Under the pieces are notes generated by a model that ran no database searches, was not told the DNA's origin, and saw only the letters and a program-made list of their open reading frames with translations. A DNA stretch of 64,000 bases. Source: Heteronotia binoei (taxonomy: Eukaryota). Below, piece after piece: positions 1 to 49,560 of this stretch; position 1 is the first letter of the stretch; every line of letters begins with the position of its first letter. The stretch is from positions 37,510,001 through 37,574,000 of the forward strand of contig NC_083237.1 in assembly GCF_032191835.1 (NCBI RefSeq), read 5' to 3'. Both the position numbers and the translations under genes were made by a program.

Positions 1-1
1 C

Positions 2-124
2 CACGCACTTTCTGCCTGCAGCAGAGCAAAGTCCAGAGCGGGAGGTAAGCGTCCCGGTGGCAGCGGTGGCAGTCAGCAGCCCCCTGGAAAAGGGGCCCAG
101 CCCCATCCGCCTGACGGCACTTAA
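2..124 (+). CDS. C-terminal end of Ngaro ORF1 (gag-like), partial
   Basis: Frame 2 reads HALSACSRAKSRAGGKRPGGSGGSQQPPGKGAQPHPPDGT*. H-x4-C fits the last half of a CCHC knuckle. Overlaps the start of the RT frame. Confidence 0.65.
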   Translation, partial: HALSACSRAKSRAGGKRPGGSGGSQQPPGKGAQPHPPDGT

Positions 125-1684
125 TAGGTTGTTGAGTGCATACCCTTGTAAGGCGGACGCCCGATACTTACAGGACGGGTTTACCTTGGGCTTTCGAATT
201 CCATACCAGGGGCCTAGGGCCCCCTTCTTAGCTCCTAATTTACGTTCGGTTGTTGGGCTTGAGCATGTGGTCTGGGCAAAAATAGCTAAAGAATGTCAGG
301 AAGGTAGGGTCCTTGGACCTTTTGATGTACCACCGGTTCCCACGTTGAGGGTGTCCCCTTTGGGGGTGGTACCCAAGAAGTCTGCGGGTGAATATCGGAT
401 TATTCACCACCTGTCGTACCCCAAGGGAGCGTCGGTGAACGACGCCATCCCTGAGGAGCTATGATCGGTGCGCTATACTTCCTTTGACCAGGCGGTCAAA
501 GTAGTACGGGGTTGCGGGGTTGGGGATGAGATGGCAAAATGCGACATTAAGTCTGCATTTCGCCTCTTGCCAGTCCACCCTGAGGATTTTGAGTTATTGG
601 GTTTTTCCTTTGAAGGGAAATACTATATGGATCGGGCGTTGCCAATGGGTTGTTCGATATCCTGTGCTGCATTTGAGCTCTTCAGTTCCTTTTTGGAATG
701 GGCGCTCAGGAACAGGACTGGGGTTAGTGATACGGCGCATTACCTGGACAACTTTTTGTCGGTCCAGCGGGGTCAGAGCAATGCGCTAGGTTGTTGACCT
801 CCTTTCAGGAGTTAGCCCTCGAACTCGGGGTGCCGTTGGCACACGAAAAAACCGAGGGACCCAGCACGGTTCTCACCTTTTTGGGCATCGAGCTGGACAC
901 TCTGCAGCAGACGTCATGTTTGCCGGAGAGCAAGGTCGTCGACCTTAAGGTCTGTTTAGCCACCTTGAGGGGACAGCGTAATGTTTCGCTGCTGGAATTG
1001 CAGCAGGTGGTGGGCCACCTTAACTTTGCTTGCAAAGTGGTGGCCCCGGGCAGGGCATTTTTGAGGCGCCTGTGTGACGCCATGGGCCGGTTGCGTCTCC
1101 CCCACCACCGGGTCCACATTACCGCTGGAATGCGAGCGGACTTGGAGGTCTGGGAAGAGTTTTTGGAGTTCTTCAATGGTGTTTCCTTCTGGAGGGAGGA
1201 CCTGAAGATTGAAGCAGAGCTCCAGATCTCTTCAGATGCGTCCGGTGCCAGTGGGTTCGGTGTATATTTTAGAGGACATTGGTGTGCGGTGCAATGGCCT
1301 GCAGAATGGTTGGATAGTGGGCTCTGTAGAGACCTGACATTTCTGGAATTTTTTCCCATTTTAGTGGCCTTTTGGCTTTGGGGGGAGTAGCTTGCCAACC
1401 ATTCTATCCTTTTTTGGTGCGATAACATGGTGGTAGTACATGTTATCAATTCTCTGACTTCTAAGTCAGTGTTAGTTATGAATTTGGTTAGGTCCTTTAC
1501 CCTGCGTTGCCTTCGGTTGAATATTTTATTCCTGGCAAGGCACGTACCAGGTGTATGCAACGGGGTGGCGGATGCTCTATCTCGCCAACAGATGGAGCGT
1601 TTTTGGCAACTGGCCCCAGAAGCAAATCCTTGGCCGGCGAAAATGCCTGCGGACTATGGCGTCTTGGGAAAAGGAAGCCGGTAG
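57..1684 (+). pseudogene. Ngaro reverse transcriptase / RNase H, disabled
   Basis: Motifs SPLGVVPKK, YRIIHHLSYP, KCDIKSAFRLLP, LPMGCSIS, FLGIELDT, SDASG, LEFFPI, HVPGVCNGVADALSR. Stops at 462-464 and 1388-1390, frameshift near 770-790, YxDD reads YLDN. Confidence 0.9.
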
Positions 1685-2627
1685 AGCCATTCAGCTGGCG
1701 CTAGCTCCTAGTACCAGAAGGGCGTACGACAGAGCTGTCACCCAATTTAGGGATTTTAGGAGTGCTGTTGCACTGCCGGATTTATTTATTTATTTGGGAT
1801 TTATATCCCGCCCTTCCCACAAATGGCTCAGGGCGGATTGTTGGCCGATCCCAGTGGCGCACATCATGCAGTTCAGCGTACACCAGAAGGAGAGAGGCTT
1901 GGGGCTGAAGACCATCAGGGGCCAGCTAGCGGCATTGGCTTTTGTTAGCAAAGCCCGCGGTTTCCCTGAATACACGGGTGATTTTAGGGTTAGGAAGATG
2001 CTGGAGGGCTGGGCCCGGGAGCGGGTCCAGCGTGTTGATGACAGACAACCCATATCCCCGTCTGTCTTTAAGGGGTTGTTTGGGGGTTGGCCCAGTGTTT
2101 GTTCTTCCCCTTTTGAGGCTGCCTTGTTTCATACTGCCTCGCTTCTGGCCTTTTTGGGGGCCTTGCGGGTGAGTGAGCTGGTAGTACAGTCCAAGACTGA
2201 TACTTCTGGGAGGGCGCTCCAGTCTGGGGACGTTAAAATTACGCAGAGTCAGCTTGTTCTGACAATTCGGCAGTCCAAGACTGATCAGCGGCAGAGGGGA
2301 ACTGTCATCACAATTGGTATGTGCTCTTTGCAGGAATTATGTCCGGTTAGGGCCGTTCACCACTACGCTCAGCTCCGGGGAGAAGCTGGGGGTCCTTTTC
2401 TTCGGCATGATGATGGCTCCCCTCTCACCAAATATCAGTTCTGGTCAGTAACAAGTAGGGCCCTAGCTAGGCTGGGTTTGAAGGGCGTCAAATTTGGGAC
2501 GCATTCCTTGCGGATTGGGGCGGCCTCCACAGCTGCTATAATGGGTTACACGCCCTCCGCCATCCGGCACATTGGCCGATGGTGGTCGGCAGCCTATAAA
2601 ACTTATGTGCGTCCACTGGTCACCTAA
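1656..2627 (+). CDS. Tyrosine recombinase of the Ngaro element
   Basis: ATG at 1656. Catalytic motifs LRVSE, HSLRIG, IGRW and YKTY present. Open frame, including a 57-nt in-frame insertion. Confidence 0.9.
   Translation: MASWEKEAGRAIQLALAPSTRRAYDRAVTQFRDFRSAVALPDLFIYLGFISRPSHKWLRADCWPIPVAHIMQFSVHQKERGLGLKTIRGQLAALAFVSKARGFPEYTGDFRVRKMLEGWARERVQRVDDRQPISPSVFKGLFGGWPSVCSSPFEAALFHTASLLAFLGALRVSELVVQSKTDTSGRALQSGDVKITQSQLVLTIRQSKTDQRQRGTVITIGMCSLQELCPVRAVHHYAQLRGEAGGPFLRHDDGSPLTKYQFWSVTSRALARLGLKGVKFGTHSLRIGAASTAAIMGYTPSAIRHIGRWWSAAYKTYVRPLVT
1783..1839 (-). mobile_element. 57-bp LINE (L2-like) 3' tail inserted in frame in the recombinase
   Basis: tatttatttatttgggatttatatcccgcccttcccacaaatggctcagggcgg matches the tail at about 45125-45185. 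CGGATT is duplicated at 1777-1782 and 1834-1839. Confidence 0.75.
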
Positions 2628-2695
2628 CGGCAAGTGGTGGGCATTGTTGGTTTGCTATGTTGCTATTATCTGCTGACAGTTGTTTGTCTTTTCAG

Positions 2696-3291
2696 GTGCT
2701 GTGGCTCATGGCGAGAGACGTCGGGTTCTCATCTGCGGGCACAGCATGGTTTTCTGGGCTGCCCATTTCGCCAGACGGTCTCCAGTGGGCACCCAGCTTG
2801 GCCTCAGTGCGTGGGCTACGGTGGAGTGGCTCGGTCGTCGGGGGCTGCGTTGGCCTGGGATTATGCCCCTGTTGTTCAGGGAGTGGAAGGCACCACCTCC
2901 ACACATTCTTGTCGTCCATTTGGGTGGGAACGACTTGGGGCTGCTGCGGGGGAAAGCTCTCTCCCAGCAGGCGTTGGCGGACCTCCGCGATATTCGGCGG
3001 ATGTGGCCTGGGGTTATTCTGGTATGGTCGGCAATTCTGCCGCGTAGGGTGTGGAGGCATGCCATTTTGCCGGGCGGTGTGGAGCGCGCTAGGCGCAAGG
3101 CCAATAGGGCCATTCAGAAAGCTATGGAAGGGGGATTGGGAATCTTTCTCCCTCATCTGGCCATACGGGTGGAGCAAGCTGACCTGTATCAGCCGGATGG
3201 TGTTCACCTTTCGGAGTTGGGCAACCGGGCCTTTTTAGATGAGATTCGGCAGGGTTTGCGGTTGGCTCTGGGCCACCCGGTGGGGCGCTAA
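2696..3291 (+). CDS. SGNH/GDSL hydrolase of the Ngaro element, predicted spliced terminal exon
   Basis: Blocks ICGHS, RRGLRW, HLGGNDL and DGVHLS are intact. Preceded by CTGAC, a pyrimidine tract and CAG at 2693-2695. Confidence 0.85.
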
Positions 3292-3656
3292 TGCCTAAGC
3301 AGAGGCTTGGCATTGGCGGTGGCTGGAGGAGGTTTGGCCATAGGGTTTTTAGGGGAGCACCTATGACCTAGCACCGTTGGTGCAGTGGTCTGTATGAACC
3401 GTAGATGGGCTACACGGCTCAGTGCGGGGAATGCAGATCGCAGGGAGCCTCACCTGGGGCAGATCTTTCCATGGGGATTTATGCTTGCCCAGGTGGTGAA
3501 TGGCTGGAGGCCTGGCCGCTCAGCTACAACCCAAATACGGCGGGCTTGTGCTGGGGGCAGGGTGGCTCGCCCTTTGGACAAGGCGGGGTCCTGGGTTGAC
3601 CCCAGGGCTTGTCTGGTTTAGGTTTTCACTCCTGCCAGTTACAGTAATTAATTGTT

Positions 3657-3662
3657 AATAAA
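3657..3662 (+). terminator. Polyadenylation signal of the Ngaro element
   Basis: AATAAA about 60 nt before the element end; the same motif context occurs in the second Ngaro copy. Confidence 0.6.
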
Positions 3663-3721
3663 GCGGCCCGGTTTAAAACCCAACACTTGTGTCTGCTTCT
3701 TCATTCCGACTGGGGGGGCAA

Positions 3722-3758
3722 AGTCCCCAGTTATTTCTTGAATTGGCCTTGGCAACAG
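3722..3758. mobile_element. hAT MITE terminal fragment, the insertion site of the Ngaro element
   Basis: agtccccagttatttcttgaattggccttggcaac matches the right end of the MITE at about 32763-32801. Confidence 0.6.
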
Positions 3759-4039
3759 TTTTACAGGCCCTACAGAAGGCTAATAAGCCTGGTAGGGCCT
3801 GAATCTCTGTAGGGAGCTGATTCCACCAGGTCAGGGCCAGGACTGAAAAAGCCCTGGCCCTAGTTGAGGCAAGGCAGGCCTGAAATGGCCAACAGATGTT
3901 GGGAGGCCGAATGTAACGACCTCCTGGGCATATATAGAAGGAAATGGTCCCGCAGGTATGTTGGTCCCAGGCTGCATAAATCTTTAAACGTTAAAACTAA
4001 AACCTCGAAGTGGATCTGGTACTCAATGGGCAACCAGTG

Positions 4040-4715
4040 CAGAAAAGAGATAACTAAAGAAAGACATGTTAGAGGCTTATAAAATTATGCATGGGGTGGA
4101 AATAATTGACAGAACTTTTTCCTCCCTCTTTCCAAATTCTAGAACTCAATGACATCCAATGAAGCTAAAGGGAAGTAGATTCAGGATAAACAAAAGGAAA
4201 TACTTCTTTAAAAGGTGATTCAAATGTGTAATTTTCAGTCAGAGAATGTAGTGATGGGCACTGGAATGTAGATTCAGGTGGGTAGCCATGTTGGTCTGCA
4301 ACGACAGAAGAAAATTTGATACCAACAAAGTTTACTCCTTGTTACAAACTTTTGTGTGCATGCACAATATATCTGAATAAGTGTGCATGCACATGAAAGC
4401 TTATACCCATTAAACTCTGTAAGTCTTAAAGGTGCCACTGGACTCACTTTGTCCACAGGAATAAACAGGATTACGGAGATTTAAGGAGAATAAGTCTAAC
4501 AATGACCAATAGCCATGGTGACTGAGGGGAACCTCCATGTAAAGGAGCTCTAAATCTCTGAATCCCATGGCCAGGAGGCAACATCAGGGAATGCCTCGGC
4601 CTCTATGCCCTGTTGTTGGCCCTCTAGAGGAACTGGTTGGCCATTGCGTGAGACAGGTTGCTGGACTAGATAGACTATTTGTCTGATTCAGTTGGGCTCT
4701 TCTTATGTTCTTAAA
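4040..4715 (+). mobile_element. CR1 LINE 3' fragment interrupted by a short repeat at about 4275-4470 (possibly a Penelope-like terminus)
   Basis: gacatgttagaggcttataaaattatgcatgg...aaaggaaatacttcttt, and the tail ending gctcttcttatgttctta. Confidence 0.65.
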
Positions 4716-5570
4716 TAAATAAATAAGTAGGGAATAGTTTGAGGTGTGCTGCATCATACTGAAGCATACATATGGTCAGTAATGGAACACAACTATCAAT
4801 TATGATTACATGTGGAAGTGCTGGATTTTGGAACTGTTGTTGGTTAGCTTGTGTTTGGTCAACACATCAGGATTCCTCATGTAGGTCATATGAAAATTTC
4901 ATTAGAAGAATCCTTGGAGAATGTAAGTAACCATTGCATTTTTTTTAATTCAATGGGGGATGAGGAAACAGTATCACCAGCAGGACAACGCCCCACTTCC
5001 CTATTTTTTGCATCATGCAACAATGAAGCCAAATGTATGATGGTGGAATGAACAGCCTATGAATGGCAAAAGTCATGAAGGTCATGACGAACTTGAAGTT
5101 TTATAATCTTAACTTTTTCATAGTGTTGCATTTGAGAAAGGAATTATAAGTCAATACTATGAGAAGAGTTACATAAATTGTAACAACAATTGGAAGACCG
5201 GTGTTGACCTATGGAGCAGGTGCCAGCATTTCCCCCACACACACACACACCTCCTCAGATGGAATCATGAGAGTGGGGGACCATATTTAGGCTCAGTGCA
5301 GGAGTGCTTTCCAATCGGGAGATGAATGGCTGGCCAGGTCTGGCAGTGACTTCCATTCCCCAATCATTCTGTCCAACATAAGCTCTCCACCAACCTACCT
5401 TCTCTTTAAAGACCATGTGCGATCAGCTAATTGCTGGTTAAAGGAATGAAAAGGAACATTTTGGGCTGAAAGGCTTTAGGGGCTGTGTTGCGGCAGCGGG
5501 ATTGTTGCTGTCTGGGGTTCCTTGAGTCAGCATTGCAGCATTGCAGTTTAGGTAAATTTGTTGAAGTTCC

Positions 5571-5805
5571 NNNNNNNNNNNNNNNNNNNNNNNNNNNNNN
5601 NNNNNNNNNNNNNNNNNNNNNNNNNNNNNNNNNNNNNNNNNNNNNNNNNNNNNNNNNNNNNNNNNNNNNNNNNNNNNNNNNNNNNNNNNNNNNNNNNNNN
5701 NNNNNNNNNNNNNNNNNNNNNNNNNNNNNNNNNNNNNNNNNNNNNNNNNNNNNNNNNNNNNNNNNNNNNNNNNNNNNNNNNNNNNNNNNNNNNNNNNNNN
5801 NNNNN
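5571..5805. other. Assembly gap (235 N)
   Basis: Run of N. Confidence 1.
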
Positions 5806-5900: not shown

Positions 5901-7164
5901 ACACTTTTGGTGATGTCAGAGGTGTGGCCTCACATACTAATGAGTTTATGCTGGGCATTTTCTACAAAAAAAAAGCCCTGATCTTTGTGCTATAGCACTC
6001 ATTCTCAACTGGATTGCCTTGTCCATTTAGGAAAATCCAGTTGCAAATGATTGTTGTGGGGCAATGATAGTGGGAGATAGTGCATTCAAACACAGCCAGC
6101 ATGCGCTAATTATCTTTTTAAATTTGTGACATAATAAACATAACAATGCAGCTGAGGGAAAAGAATTTCCTCAGATTTTTCTGATTAGGGATGCCAGACC
6201 CTTGGGAGCAATTTGCAAAGACTGTACAGGCTTTAAATGAATCTCCTTTCCATGCTCAGAGAGTTTTTTCTTTCCTTCATTCATCTAGTTAGAATGAGAA
6301 ATCAGCTGCATACATTATGGGAAGCTCCATGACAAGATTCAGTGATGTAGATGAATTGAAGTATGGACTAAAGCATCTAGTGGAAAAATTAAACCTAATG
6401 TAGACATTATCCCCCAAAGTGTTTAATCTGTCATAGAAAGTAGTATTTTTAAAAGCATATTTGCAGCATTCCAGGAAAAGATTGTCAATCTTTTTAACTT
6501 CTTCTAATTTTCCTGTCTACTACTATATCTATTTGTTATCCATTTTATCTAATACTGAGTTTTGTAAATAGAGGAAACCTTGTGCCCTTCTACTTGTGTC
6601 CTTCCACTACCATCAGAAGACTGGAGAAAGGCTTCAAACTTGGCTGAGTGGTATGGCATCATACAAACGTTTATGGAGGAAAATTGATTAATGAACGTTC
6701 CCATTTAGCTTCTGAAGAGATATCCATTGTCTGAAAAATATTTTTTGCAATATTGGCATTACATCATTTAGTAAAGTTTAACTATTTTGCTATCTATGAA
6801 AGTCTCTATTCCATTATGATTACATTTTGTATAACCTTCTAATGGATAGCCCTCTTTGTAAAGACAAGGGTAGTCTCCAAGGGAAGGGGATAGAAAATGT
6901 ATTATTTGAATTTACCCTAAAAATCCCAGACAAGCAGTTAGATCCAGCCAGATACCATTCCCACAATCTTGTGCAAGTTATCTTGTCCATTATTATACAC
7001 CTGTCCCAAATGTATTTTGTCCATGCATGTGCTAAGATCCTCATCATTTTGGGTGGTTAAATAAGAATCTGTGGTCATGTGGTCATCTAGTGATCCATTT
7101 TCCCACTTTTTGTAATATGATAGATTATAAAAATTAATCATATTCATTTGTCGCATGATACAGA

Positions 7165-7440
7165 CTTGAAGAAGAAGAAGAGTGCAATTCATACTCTGCT
7201 CGTCACTCAGAGTCTCAGAGCAGCTTACAAATCTCCTTCTCTTCCTCTTCCTACAGCCGATACCTTGTGACTTAAGGTGGGCTAAGAGAGCTCTAAGAGA
7301 ACTTCTTTTGGGAGAACAGCTCTGAGAGAACTGTGATTGATCCAAGGTAACTCAGTTGGCTGCATGGAAAGGAGTAGGGAATTAAACCTATTTCCCTAGA
7401 TTATAATCCACTACTCTTAACCACTACACCAAATTGGGTC
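7165..7440 (-). mobile_element. tRNA-derived squamate SINE (Squam3-like)
   Basis: Reverse complement begins ccaatttggtgtagtggttaagagtagtgg; ttc-repeat tail. Confidence 0.7.
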
Positions 7441-7966
7441 TCACCCTGGGATTTTACTCTTACATTAGCAATCATTCCTTCACCCCTCCTGATTTCAGAC
7501 TGGTCAGATTCTATCTCAATCTTATCTTTATCATGAACTATCTTTATCATGAACTTTGTTGATGTATCTGCCTCTTATACCTTTGCTTCACCTTCATAAG
7601 CAAAGGGAATGAGTTGCTTGGAGGCACAATGAATTATGAGATTTCCCACATACACTCTGAAGCAATACAAGTAGAGTTCCCTTGTCCTGTGGCCTTGTCT
7701 GAAGATTTAGGTCCACAGGTTACCTTTCTCTCTGCCTCTGAGCAAACTGTTTGAATCTTCAGGACTGCAGAAGCACACTACTATGGATAGGGCTGAGTTC
7801 AAGGTCTTAGAACCTAGGGGTATGCAATTTATAAAATTTTCTATCTATATAGTAGACCTATGTATATGTTTATGTTTAATTTCATTTATACTCCACCCTC
7901 CCCACCAAAGATGGGGACAGAGTAAGCTAATGAGATCTTTAGCCCCCTCCACTTTCTCTTTATTTA

Positions 7967-8111
7967 NNNNNNNNNNNNNNNNNNNNNNNNNNNNNNNNNN
8001 NNNNNNNNNNNNNNNNNNNNNNNNNNNNNNNNNNNNNNNNNNNNNNNNNNNNNNNNNNNNNNNNNNNNNNNNNNNNNNNNNNNNNNNNNNNNNNNNNNNN
8101 NNNNNNNNNNN
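7967..8111. other. Assembly gap (145 N)
   Basis: Run of N. Confidence 1.
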
Positions 8112-8575
8112 GACCCAAACATGCTTACGAGAAAAAAAAACACAGAGATATAATTACAGAAATAAAGAACCAGGGTGGTTTGAGATCCAATTGGGTTGGC
8201 TAACTAAAGGCTACAGGCCTTGCAAATATATTAGAACCTAGAGCCCTACGGCAAATATATTAGAACCTCATGCCCTCACCCTTCCATAGCTTTTAAATAT
8301 ATAAAAAAGGTAACAGAGGTTAAGCCTTGATCATTTACAGATGGAAGACATGTTCTGAAGAGTCCCCCCTCTGCTTAAAGAGCCTTTGGTCACATTCAGC
8401 CTTTTCTACCTGAAACAGAAAAAGGGAAACAGAAACTCAGCTTAGATCATTTCAGGCTGACAGACTTGCTCCCATGATTTCCCTTTCCTCTCCTCATTCA
8501 ACACTCAGTTATTAAGTTGATTCTGATTTATGTGAGTAGAGTTAAAAATCTCTTGTGCTTTGTTCTACTGGTAGC

Positions 8576-45094: not shown

Positions 45095-45365
45095 ACTGCA
45101 ATCACACATGCTAAATAATTTTTTTTTATTTTTTATTTATTTAGAATTTATATCCCGCCCTTCCCACAAGTGGCTCAGGGCGGCTTCCAGCATTAGATCC
45201 AACATAAATTAAACAATATTTAAACATGTAAGGGAATAACTTTAAAACAGATATAATCCACTTTCAATGCACTTTCCAACTGAATTTTAATGTGTGAGCT
45301 GGCAAAATCCAATTTGAAAGTGCATTGAAAGTGGTTTGAAACTGCATTATTTAGCATGTGTGATC
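45095..45365. mobile_element. Palindromic MITE (Harbinger-like) interrupted by an L2-like tail at about 45118-45255
   Basis: cacacatgctaaataat...attatttagcatgtgtg inverted ends; internal atccactttcaatgcacttt...aaagtgcattgaaagtgg. Confidence 0.55.
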
Positions 45366-47660: not shown

Positions 47661-49040
47661 TTGCCCCCCCAAGTCGGGGGGAGGGGCAAAATCTCCCCTG
47701 CAGCCACGCTGTGATGCGACGGGCCACAGGAGGCTCTGTTGCCCCCCCAAGTCAGAATAAAGAGACGGACACAATTAGATTGGTGAAACTATGGGCCACT
47801 TTATTAAATAACACGGCAAGGGCAACCGAACTGTGGCCAGGTCAGGGCCAGGGGTCTCATCAGACCGCTCCCCTGCCTTTTCCAGTGGGCGAGAGACCCG
47901 CCTCCCCAGCCAGAGCTGTGAGCCACAGCTCCCGTTAGGCAGGCCCAGCAGGGAGGCTCGCACCGGAGGGTCCAGACACCAGATGCAAGTCTCAGCGAAA
48001 GGCACCCATCTAATCAAGTCTCCAGGACAGTCTGCATTCACACACCTCGAGCCACACCCAAAGGATGATCCTGCCAGACCCCTAACTCCCCAAAAGGGGG
48101 CGGCTAACTGGTCCACCCCAGGCCGCATGGTGCCATAAACCCTGTAAAACCTGCCACAACTAAGGCTAAGTCTCTACTTAGGGCTTAGCACCACCGAAAG
48201 GCCCAAACCCAACACAAGCCCTTGCCACAAATCCCTCAGGAAAATCATATTACCCTTTTTCGAGAGATGCATATTACCCTATGTAGAGGTCAGGACATTC
48301 CCTAGAAATATCTGGATGAGGCAAATAGTGGCCCAAACCACCCTCCAAAATCTTGCGAATCTCCTTATTCGCACTGTAACGAGCCTTCCCTATCCCAGCT
48401 GGATTTCAAGCACTGCGCTACACCAAGCATGGAATCATGGCCGACCAAACTATAATGGTACCAGGCCAACTGTTCCTTATGTTCTTGAAATCATCTCGGG
48501 CTTGCAAGATCAACGCCTTGTCTTTAATCATCCTGAGATCATTCCCTCCCAGGTGAACAATTAATACCTGCGGAAGAGGGCCCACACACCCGTGAAACAA
48601 AAGGGGGAGCAAGCCAGGCCACTGAAGACCCTGGCGCCACTGCCATTCAACCGTAACATATTTGCTAAGCCCCAGCTGAGAGCCAACAGCAGTTCTCCGA
48701 GCTTGATGTGCCACCCAAATCACATAACTGTGCCCGCAGATGAGAACTCTGCTCCTCCGGCCAGGAACAACAGCATCTAAAAGGAAAAAACAGACAAGTT
48801 ATAAAACCCAAACCTTAAATTACCCCAGCTCCTAATCACAAACTACTAGCGGAGCAAAGGGCGAATATAACCTTTGTAAACCTGAGACCGCCAACAGACA
48901 AGGCACTGAATGGACGAAGTAGGATAACCCAAGGCAGCAGCCGTAGAGGCTGTGCCGATTCTAAAGGAATGGGTACCAAATCTCACTCCAGACAACCCCA
49001 ACAAGGCTAAAGCCCTGGATGTCACGACCCAAAATTGATG
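47661..49040 (-). mobile_element. Second, diverged Ngaro element, 5'-truncated (recombinase C-terminus, SGNH, 3' terminus)
   Basis: 48846-49040 reads QFWVVTSRALALLGLSGVRFGTHSFRIG...YKGYIRPLLR*; SGNH follows; terminus aataaagtggccc...gacttgggggggcaa. Confidence 0.88.
48180..48776 (-). pseudogene. SGNH hydrolase exon of the second Ngaro, disabled
   Basis: AVVPGRRSRVLICGHSYVIW...HLGGNDL; stops from 48418 onward; acceptor ttttttccttttAG at 48778-48777. Confidence 0.85.
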
Positions 49041-49043
49041 TTT

Positions 49044-49560
49044 TGTCAGAGGGCTGTCAAGTCGGCTGATTCAATAACGAGACCTTTTTGATAAAAAGTT
49101 TCTAGTTTATTGATATCATTGTTTCCAACAGCTAAAAGATTGAGAGACTGAGGAACATACAGTAAAAGGTAATCATATAAGGTATCCTTCAAAGGAATTC
49201 TTTAGGGAGGGGGTACTATGCAGGGCACATTCACACATTGATGTTACAAATCGTTCTCCGGCTGATTGGCCTTGGGCAAGGCGCCTCTCCCCTGGTGCCC
49301 AGTCTGAGAAGGCTGGGCACCTTCTGCAGATGATGAATATGCAACTCATCTCCAAAGACCCCTCAAAGCCTCAAAGGAGCCCCCCCCCCCCGGGACTCTC
49401 TTTTAACCAAGGTAAATCTCCTCAGAGTTTCCTGTGCATATCTTGGACTGATCTCTGACTGAGAAAAGTAGACAGTAGGCATTAAATTGCCCCCCACTAC
49501 CCCGAACAGAAGCCCCGCCCTGCTCCCCTTCTGAGAAGCAATTCAGCTCGGCATTTTCCA
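49044..49560 (-). mobile_element. LTR fragment (extent approximate)
   Basis: Minus strand shows CCAAT, a TATA-like motif, AATAAA and a terminal ...ctctgaca. Confidence 0.45.

What the first reader, a model, noticed from the sequence alone, without database searches (positions are those of the whole stretch)
2..3291. Predicted splice fuses Ngaro Gag/ORF1 to the SGNH hydrolase, skipping RT-RNaseH-recombinase
Seen in sequence: (1) The SGNH ORF has no in-frame ATG before its nucleophile; the first ATG follows GHS (GHSM), so internal initiation would lose the catalytic serine. (2) It is preceded by a branch-like CTGAC, a pyrimidine tract and CAG (AG at 2694-2695), which leaves 2 nt (GT) before the reading frame. 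(3) A strong donor GAG|GTAAGC lies at 44|45, just after the H-x4-C of ORF1, and leaves exactly 1 nt of codon. Joining 44 to 2696 removes 2651 nt and reads HALSACSRAKSRAG-G-AVAHGERRRVLICGHS... in frame to the stop at 3291. Established: some vertebrate Ngaro elements carry an SGNH hydrolase ORF, and CR1/L2 ORF1 proteins carry one as a fused domain. Inference: the element makes both plain Gag and a Gag-esterase isoform by alternative splicing, which could give its particles a lipid- or membrane-interacting domain. I do not know of this expression route being described for Ngaro, but I cannot check the literature.
Basis: partly seen in the sequence, partly recalled or inferred. Interest (0 to 1): 0.92.

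Follow-up and report, generated by a model that had tools for sequence, protein, structure and literature searches.

The report
Ngaro esterase splice: wrong donor

Summary
GAG|GTAAGC lies at 44|45 and the acceptor AG at 2694-2695. Joining 44 to 2696 is in frame, and there is no in-frame ATG before the GHS serine.

The acceptor looks real. A pyrimidine tract plus YAG in phase 1 sits at the same codon in 8 of 8 Ngaro elements examined, including a second diverged fragment in this window.

The donor is not supported. RefSeq models in at least 9 squamate species join the first 128-140 codons of Gag to the esterase. They use a phase-1 G|GTRAG donor about 1 kb upstream of the zinc knuckle, which is outside this window. 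At the site homologous to 44|45, five related elements have no GT or only a weak one. About 75% of GTs in this Gly-rich tail are phase 1 anyway. None of 204 retrieved esterase homologues contains a CCHC knuckle.

One public 1.7-kb contig carries the intron-less Gag-N/esterase form, but I could not tell whether that run is RNA or DNA. No RNA run could be listed for this genome.

The window copy is a dead fossil with stops, frameshifts and a repeat insertion. This scan already reached the same conclusion on other copies in this genome (s1-322583, s1-325722). I found no paper describing the splice.

The parts
2..124 (+). Last 40 codons of ORF1 (Gag), from the H-x4-C end of the zinc knuckle through a Gly-rich tail to stop TAA at 122-124. 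The window start cuts the element here.
   Evidence: Aligns to the Eublepharis Gag tail HAFTACPRSKKRGGGRRP...GKGSQPH.
42..50 (+). It is made by the codon pair GGT-AAG (Gly-Lys). It looks strong but is not conserved.
   Evidence: 10.3 bits on an approximate matrix; relatives have GGG|GTAGGC, GGA GGC AAA or no GT; about 0.016 such sites expected per 120 nt.
3..1684 (+). RT/RNase H ORF remnants. The reading frame overlaps the Gag tail. There is an in-frame TGA at 462-464, a frameshift near 752-785 and an in-frame TAG at 1388-1390.
   Evidence: RVT_1, E 4.6e-06; tblastn with the Eublepharis pol: frame 3 over 84-782, frame 2 over 752-1672.
1507..2627 (+). Tyrosine recombinase ORF remnant. It has a frameshift near 1653-1656 and a repeat-derived insertion of about 65 nt at 1786-1850. 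Stop TAA is at 2625-2627.
   Evidence: The motifs ALRVSEL, HSLRIGAAS and GRWWSAAYKTY were read directly from the translation.
2673..2695 (+). 3' splice signals: branch-like CTGAC (2673-2677, which contains the in-frame stop TGA 2674-2676), a pyrimidine tract, and CAG with AG at 2694-2695.
   Evidence: The same layout and phase occur in 8 of 8 elements and in a frog element.
2696..3291 (+). SGNH esterase exon, phase 1. It is intact: GHS 2737-2745, GGND 2923-2934, DGVH 3196-3207, stop 3289-3291.
3292..3730 (+). 3' non-coding part of the element, with AATAAA at 3657-3662. No second copy of a terminal repeat was found downstream. The end coordinate is approximate.
48283..49055 (-). Second, diverged Ngaro fragment holding the YR C-terminus plus an SGNH exon (56% aa identity to the first). 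Acceptor is ...ttttccttttAG|AT GCT GTT, with AG at 48778-48777 and the exon starting at 48776, in the same codon position and phase 1. It is decayed.

Best explanation
Window 1-~3730 is the 3' part of a dead Ngaro (tyrosine-recombinase) retrotransposon copy. In this element family the SGNH esterase has no start codon of its own. It is the second exon of a subgenomic, env-like spliced mRNA.

The splice works as follows. A phase-1 donor about 130-140 codons into Gag is joined to the phase-1 acceptor at 2695|2696. This removes the rest of Gag (including the zinc knuckle), RT/RNase H and the recombinase, about 3.0-3.6 kb in all. The product is a protein of about 330-345 aa. It has a basic N-terminus, two short helices, a disordered linker and a PAF-acetylhydrolase-like esterase domain.

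For this copy the real donor would lie about 1.0 kb upstream of window base 1. The GAG|GTAAGC at 44|45 is a Gly-Lys codon pair (GGT-AAG) that happens to look like a donor.

Shown: the acceptor is conserved, the exon structures of the annotated models agree, and an intron-less contig exists. Inferred: that the splice happens in vivo in this species, and what the fusion protein does (membrane or lipid targeting, by analogy with the CR1/L2 ORF1p esterase).
For: (1) At least 30 proteins from Eublepharis, Anolis carolinensis, A. sagrei, Rhineura, Hemicordylus, Elgaria, Pogona, Heteronotia and Gekko begin MPPKKG..KGKQPAKRP..SSDDED..ILARLxALE and end in the SGNH domain. Most are RefSeq XP models.

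(2) Exon mapping on genomic loci gave these donors: tgggagatg|GTAAGT (L001), tag|GTAAAG (L004), agg|GTGAGT (L005), cgg|GTGAGC (L009). All are phase 1, after codons 128-140 of a 468-518-aa ORF1. Introns are 3051-3615 nt. The same donor is used in L010 and L011.

(3) A phase-1 YAG acceptor with a pyrimidine tract is present in 8 of 8 elements, including both window copies, and in a frog element.

(4) The Logan contig L014 (1677 nt) holds one uninterrupted 394-aa Gag-N+SGNH ORF. It is joined at ..GGAGATG|GC.., homologous to the Eublepharis donor. A sister full-length Gag is P0228.

(5) L001 and L005 have the Ngaro split direct repeats A1...B1-A2-B2.

(6) The AlphaFold model of P0009 has helices at 37-54 and 72-92, a disordered stretch at 94-144, and a confident SGNH fold at 149-336. 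Its best structural matches are PAF-acetylhydrolase Ib chains. The only PDB sequence hit is the zebrafish L2 ORF1p esterase 4c1b.
Against: - No RNA reads were seen. The look-up of sequencing runs listed no run for this genome on two attempts, so read laying could not be used.
- I could not inspect the transcript support behind the RefSeq models, and some may be propagated by protein homology.
- The molecule type of SRR6291285 (RNA or DNA) is unknown to me.
- The canonical donor cannot be read for this copy because it lies outside the window.
- Frog models reach the same acceptor from a different donor, so donor position is not fixed across vertebrates.
Confidence: 0.75

Rival explanations
1. 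One reading: this family splices from GAG|GTAAGC at 44|45, just after the zinc knuckle, to 2696. This would give a nearly full-length Gag-esterase isoform, either as the main product or as an alternative one.
For: The site is a strong consensus match and the best of 176 GTs in 1-2690. Such a site is expected only about 0.016 times per 120 nt. It is in frame. Donor position does vary between lineages, since frogs use a donor at the RT/RH end.
Against: The homologous site is weak in L001 and has no GT in L010, L011, L005 and L009. Its phase 1 is the default for GGT codons, with 21 of 28 GTs in these tails in phase 1. None of 204 retrieved esterase homologues contains a CCHC knuckle. All mapped models use the upstream donor. 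Many Ngaro copies were scanned in this genome (42 notes), so a 1-in-60 chance site is expected to turn up somewhere.
Confidence: 0.08
2. The esterase is made without splicing. Possible routes are non-AUG initiation inside the short upstream stretch (for example TTG at 2680), reinitiation after the recombinase ORF, or a frameshift from it.
For: The recombinase stop and the esterase ORF are only about 70 nt apart. In some relatives the esterase frame stays open 190 nt upstream, into the recombinase ORF. A few relatives have an in-frame ATG upstream (Anolis 2, L011 1).
Against: An in-frame stop lies 24-51 nt before the first full codon in four of the eight elements. What is conserved there is a pyrimidine tract plus YAG, not a start codon or a slippery site. 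Annotated models and the intron-less contig both show the spliced form.
Confidence: 0.07
3. The Gag-N/esterase proteins are annotation artefacts. Gene predictors chain two open frames of a repeat through chance GT..AG pairs, and no such mRNA exists.
For: I saw no reads. Some models are clearly chimeric or truncated (P0001 spans 98 kb; P0010; P0056).
Against: Donor and acceptor positions and phases agree across families that are only about 40% identical, from four distant squamate lineages. The acceptor lies in non-coding sequence yet is conserved. An independent assembly from a sequencing run gives the joined form.
Confidence: 0.1

Closest known systems
Ngaro elements with a hydrolase ORF (Goodwin & Poulter 2004, as cited in PMC9210276 and PMC7192593; Xenopus DIRS-53_XT and DIRS-54_XT)
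   Same: Same ORF order (gag-like, RT/RH, YR, then an SGNH hydrolase ORF). Split direct repeats are present in intact relatives.
   Different: The papers I could read call the hydrolase an extra ORF of unknown function and do not mention splicing. Here the ORF behaves as an exon joined to the Gag N-terminus. I could not read the 2004 paper or the 2015 review.
Retroviral and LTR-retrotransposon env or ORF3 subgenomic splicing (PMC5408684 states that ORF3s of LTR retrotransposons are typically expressed from spliced messages, including GDSL esterase ORF3s in bdelloid Vesta elements)
   Same: A 5' donor near the start of gag, an acceptor just before a 3' accessory ORF, and removal of gag-pol. The accessory ORF is also a GDSL/SGNH esterase in Vesta.
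   Different: The host element is a tyrosine-recombinase (DIRS-order) retrotransposon, not an LTR/integrase element. The donor lies 130-140 codons inside Gag, so the product is a true Gag-N fusion.
Esterase-type ORF1p of CR1/L2 non-LTR retrotransposons (zebrafish ZfL2-1, PDB 4c1b; PMC3905857)
   Same: The only PDB sequence hit for the window esterase (E 6e-4). Similar layout: N-terminal helical region, linker, then an SGNH esterase of similar total size. That paper reports esterase activity and liposome binding for ZfL2-1.
   Different: In L2 the two parts are one contiguous ORF. Here they are brought together by splicing. Trimeric coiled-coil formation is not shown for the Ngaro N-terminus; the helices are predicted at low confidence.
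PAF-acetylhydrolase Ib catalytic subunits (PDB 3dt6, 1wab)
   Same: Best structural matches to the modelled esterase domain. Same Ser/Asp/His blocks.
   Different: About 18-20% sequence identity. A cellular enzyme, not an element-borne one.

Membership tests
Ngaro (DIRS-order tyrosine-recombinase retrotransposon) | ORF order gag-like, RT/RNase H, tyrosine recombinase, with no integrase or protease | tested here: met
   RVT_1 scores E 4.6e-06, below Pfam's cutoff. The recombinase was recognised by homology to the intact relatives' ORF and by the motifs ALRVSEL, HSLRIG and GRW..AY..Y read in the translation. It gave no Pfam hit.
Ngaro (DIRS-order tyrosine-recombinase retrotransposon) | Split direct repeats A1 ... 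B1-A2-B2 | tested here: inconclusive
   In the window the 5' end is cut off and no direct repeat was found in 3250-5200. In the relatives it is met: L001 has A1 1653-1822, B1 7159-7590, A2 7588-7757 and B2 7932-8363, and L005 is likewise.
SGNH/GDSL hydrolase | Conserved blocks with catalytic Ser (GxS), Gly, Asn (GxND) and Asp-x-x-His | tested here: met
   GHS 2737-2745, GGND 2923-2934, DGVH 3196-3207. PF13472 scores 40.1 bits, above the 32.9 cutoff. The fold of relative P0009 matches PAF-AH.
env-like subgenomic spliced mRNA of a retroelement | Conserved 3' splice site immediately upstream of the accessory ORF | tested here: met
   8 of 8 elements, all phase 1; also a frog element.
env-like subgenomic spliced mRNA of a retroelement | Conserved 5' splice site in the leader or early gag | tested here: inconclusive
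   Met in six related loci. For this copy the site lies upstream of window base 1 and cannot be read.
env-like subgenomic spliced mRNA of a retroelement | Spliced RNA observed | tested here: inconclusive
   The intron-less contig L014 comes from run SRR6291285, whose molecule type is unknown to me. RefSeq models exist. No run could be listed for this genome.
Esterase-type ORF1p (CR1/L2) | N-terminal trimeric coiled coil followed by an esterase in one polypeptide | tested here: inconclusive
   Esterase homology is weak but specific (4c1b). Two helices are predicted in Gag-N at pLDDT 50-66. Oligomerisation was not tested.

The most novel reading that the evidence does not exclude
Ngaro elements of squamates, and with another donor those of frogs, regularly make a retrovirus-like subgenomic spliced mRNA. 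Its product fuses the N-terminal module of Gag to an SGNH esterase. The papers I could search do not describe this route for tyrosine-recombinase retrotransposons. The fusion recreates by splicing the helix-linker-esterase layout of CR1/L2 ORF1p, so the shared Gag N-terminus may bring the esterase into Gag assemblies.
Probability: 0.6. Interest if true: 0.6.

Novelty: new variant of a known kind. Interest (0 to 1): 0.4.

Why it matters
The hydrolase ORF of Ngaro elements is listed as "function unknown" in the papers I could read, and none of them says how it is expressed. A conserved Gag-N/esterase splice would make three things testable:
- how the ORF is translated;
- that DIRS-order elements use subgenomic splicing, as retroviruses do;
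- whether an esterase tethered to a Gag module is a recurrent solution, as in CR1/L2 ORF1p and the bdelloid Vesta ORF3.

For annotation, it explains hundreds of "uncharacterized protein LOC..." and "1-alkyl-2-acetylglycerophosphocholine esterase" models in lizard genomes. It also explains host-gene isoforms that end in an esterase exon.

For this particular window the lesson is narrower. The proposed zinc-knuckle donor should not be carried forward.

Tried and rejected
- RNA evidence. The look-up of sequencing runs was tried on 1-3300 (kind rna) and on 2640-3300 (kind any). No run was listed either time, so read laying was never usable.
- Spliced transcripts in Logan. A search with a 16-sequence fusion profile gave only genome-based models plus unspliced short ORFs. 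P0053, P0046 and P0081 read through the pyrimidine tract, so they are unspliced. Only P0069/L014 is intron-less.
- Literature. Six searches found no description of the splice. Goodwin & Poulter 2004 is not held. The run id appears in no paper.
- Elgaria P0030 is not on record for a locus look-up.
- P0001 turned out to be a 98-kb chimeric model. I used it only for its last element.
- Terminal repeats. A search downstream of the esterase in the window found none.
- Frog-type donor. I considered whether the donor at the RT/RH end exists here. The window has GGC GTC at that spot, with no GT.
- Donor scores come from an approximate matrix written from memory, not from MaxEntScan. They are good for ranking only.
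Full report
**What is in the window**

Bases 1 to about 3730 are the 3' part of a Ngaro-type tyrosine-recombinase retrotransposon. The window start cuts it inside ORF1.
- Frame 2 of 2-124 is the last 40 codons of Gag (HALSACSRAKSRAGGKRPGG...GKGAQPH..*). It aligns to the tail of the 518-aa Gag of an intact Eublepharis macularius element.
- The RT/RNase H ORF follows. It carries an in-frame TGA at 462-464, a frameshift near 752-785 and an in-frame TAG at 1388-1390.
- The recombinase ORF comes next. It has a frameshift near 1653 and a repeat-derived insertion at 1786-1850.
- The SGNH esterase ORF is intact. It matches PF13472 above Pfam's cutoff and keeps GHS, GGND and DGVH.

As an autonomous element this copy is dead.

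**Checking the observation**

- GAG|GTAAGC lies at 44|45, in phase 1.
- CTGAC lies at 2673-2677 and the pyrimidine tract follows it.
- AG is at 2694-2695 and exon 2 starts at 2696.
- Joining 44 to 2696 reads ...SRAG-G-AVAHGERRRVLICGHS in frame to the stop at 3289-3291.
- The in-frame stop TGA at 2674-2676 closes the esterase frame upstream.
- The first in-frame ATG follows the catalytic serine.

**The acceptor looks real**

A second, diverged Ngaro fragment lies on the minus strand at 48283-49055, with 56% amino-acid identity in the esterase. After its recombinase stop it has ttataac, a long pyrimidine tract and TAG. These are followed by two bases and then GCT GTT, which is the same codon position and phase. 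The same layout is present in six further elements from Eublepharis, Anolis, Rhineura and Hemicordylus and in a Leptodactylus frog element. This sequence is non-coding, so the conservation points to a splice signal.

**The donor is elsewhere**

A protein search with the esterase returned many RefSeq models of about 330-345 aa from at least nine squamate species. Their N-terminal 130-140 residues (MPPKKG..KGKQPAKRP..SSDDED..ILARLxALE..) are followed directly by the esterase.

I fetched the genomic loci and mapped the exons.
- In each locus ORF1 starts with that N-terminal sequence and runs on for 468-518 codons to a zinc knuckle at its very end.
- The models leave ORF1 after codon 128-140 at a phase-1 donor: G|GTAAGT, G|GTAAAG, G|GTGAGT or G|GTGAGC.
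- They then skip 3051-3615 nt, which holds the rest of Gag, RT/RH and YR, and enter the esterase at the conserved acceptor.
- By homology with L001, the donor of the window copy would lie about 1.0 kb before window base 1.

The Eublepharis and Rhineura elements carry the A1...B1-A2-B2 split direct repeats that define Ngaro.

On an approximate 5' splice-site matrix written from memory, 44|45 scores 10.3 bits. That is the best of 176 GTs in 1-2690, and only about 0.016 such sites are expected per 120 nt. It is therefore a good-looking site. Three results speak against it as a functional donor.
- It is not conserved. At the homologous codon pair the relatives have GGG|GTAGGC (5.4 bits, L001), GGA GGC AAA (L010), and no GT in L011, L005 or L009.
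- Its phase carries little information. In these Gly-rich tails 21 of 28 GTs are phase 1 because they come from GGT-type codons, so being in frame with a phase-1 acceptor is the expected outcome.
- None of the 204 esterase homologues retrieved contains a C-x2-C-x3/4-H-x4-C knuckle anywhere. These include proteins up to 3112 aa from a search with no length limit.

The scan holds 42 notes on Ngaro in this genome, so a roughly 1-in-60 chance site is also expected to appear in some truncated copy.

**Direct evidence for the spliced form**

No sequencing run could be listed for this genome, so I saw no reads.

One Logan contig does bear on the question: L014, SRR6291285_43862, 1677 nt. It carries a single uninterrupted 394-aa ORF made of a Gag-N region and the esterase. 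The two parts are joined at ..GGAGATG|GC.., the position homologous to the Eublepharis donor TTGGGAGATG|GTAAGT. A sister full-length Gag is on another Logan contig (P0228). I do not know whether that run is RNA or DNA. Either way, a join exactly at the splice sites is what a spliced RNA, or its reverse-transcribed copy, would leave.

**How it most likely works**

The element makes full-length RNA for Gag and Pol, and a spliced subgenomic RNA for a Gag-N/esterase fusion.
- The AlphaFold model of the Eublepharis fusion has a disordered basic N-terminus, two helices (37-54 and 72-92, low confidence) and a disordered linker (94-144). The SGNH domain (149-336) is modelled with confidence.
- The esterase domain's best structural matches are PAF-acetylhydrolase Ib chains.
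- The only PDB hit by sequence for the window esterase is the zebrafish L2 ORF1p esterase 4c1b. According to PMC3905857, that protein is an active esterase that binds negatively charged liposomes and sits behind a coiled coil.

The idea that the Ngaro fusion targets membranes or lipids, and joins Gag assemblies through the shared N-terminus, is inference by analogy.

**Comparison with what is known**

The papers I could read describe the Ngaro hydrolase only as an extra ORF of unknown function (PMC9210276, PMC7192593, PMC6681497). Splicing of 3' accessory ORFs, including GDSL esterases, is stated for LTR retrotransposons (PMC5408684). I could not read Goodwin & Poulter 2004 or Poulter & Butler 2015, so earlier mention cannot be excluded. 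Two earlier follow-ups of this scan on other copies in this genome reached the same reading (s1-322583, s1-325722). I retested their claims independently here.

**Verdict**

The better-supported product is a short Gag-N/esterase fusion whose donor lies outside this window.

Noticed in passing
window 48283-49055 (minus strand): A second, diverged and decayed Ngaro fragment holding the YR C-terminus and an SGNH exon (56% aa identity to the first). It is 5'-truncated and has the same phase-1 acceptor (exon start 48776).
   Followed up: partly
L013:6001-8560 (Leptodactylus fuscus); proteins P0045, P0092, P0209: Frog gene models reach the same phase-1 acceptor (ttattAG|GT GTT CAG) from a different phase-1 donor, TATG|GTAAGG, at the very end of the RT/RNase H ORF (..TWAGYG|). 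Only the recombinase ORF is skipped. The window has GGC GTC at that spot.
   Followed up: partly
proteins P0054, P0063, P0064, P0089 (RefSeq): Host-gene isoforms end in a Ngaro-type SGNH exon: DUSP12 in Heteronotia, VGLL4 in Erythrolamprus, and ZNF318-like in both Elgaria and Eublepharis. This looks like exon capture through the element's acceptor. The ZNF318-like case in two distant lizards might be an old domestication.
   Followed up: no
L014:1-1677 (Logan contig SRR6291285_43862): An intron-less Gag-N/esterase ORF (449-1633) with 448 nt of upstream sequence. The species and molecule type of the run are unknown to me.
   Followed up: partly
L012:2001-10201 (Cyprinodon tularosa): A three-exon SGNH gene with no RT or YR similarity anywhere in the 12.2-kb locus fetched (gene range 8.2 kb), but with the same acceptor phase (ttttag|GT AAA CCA). 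It may be a domesticated or non-autonomous derivative.
   Followed up: no
window 1786-1850 and 45129-45182: A repeat fragment of about 65 nt (tttatttatttatttgggatttatatcccgcccttccc...) is inserted in frame in the recombinase ORF. The same repeat occurs again on the minus strand near 45.1 kb.
   Followed up: no
L002 compared with L001 and L003 (Eublepharis macularius): One of three near-identical copies ends right after B1 and lacks A2-B2. The window copy likewise shows no repeated terminal segment after its 3' region.
   Followed up: no
window 5571-5805 and 7967-8111: Two runs of N (assembly gaps or masked stretches).
   Followed up: no
window 3-124 and L001:3759-4057: The RT/RH reading frame is open across the whole Gag tail (about 300 nt of overlap in the intact relative). 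The zinc-knuckle region is therefore dual-coding. How Pol is translated was not examined.
   Followed up: no
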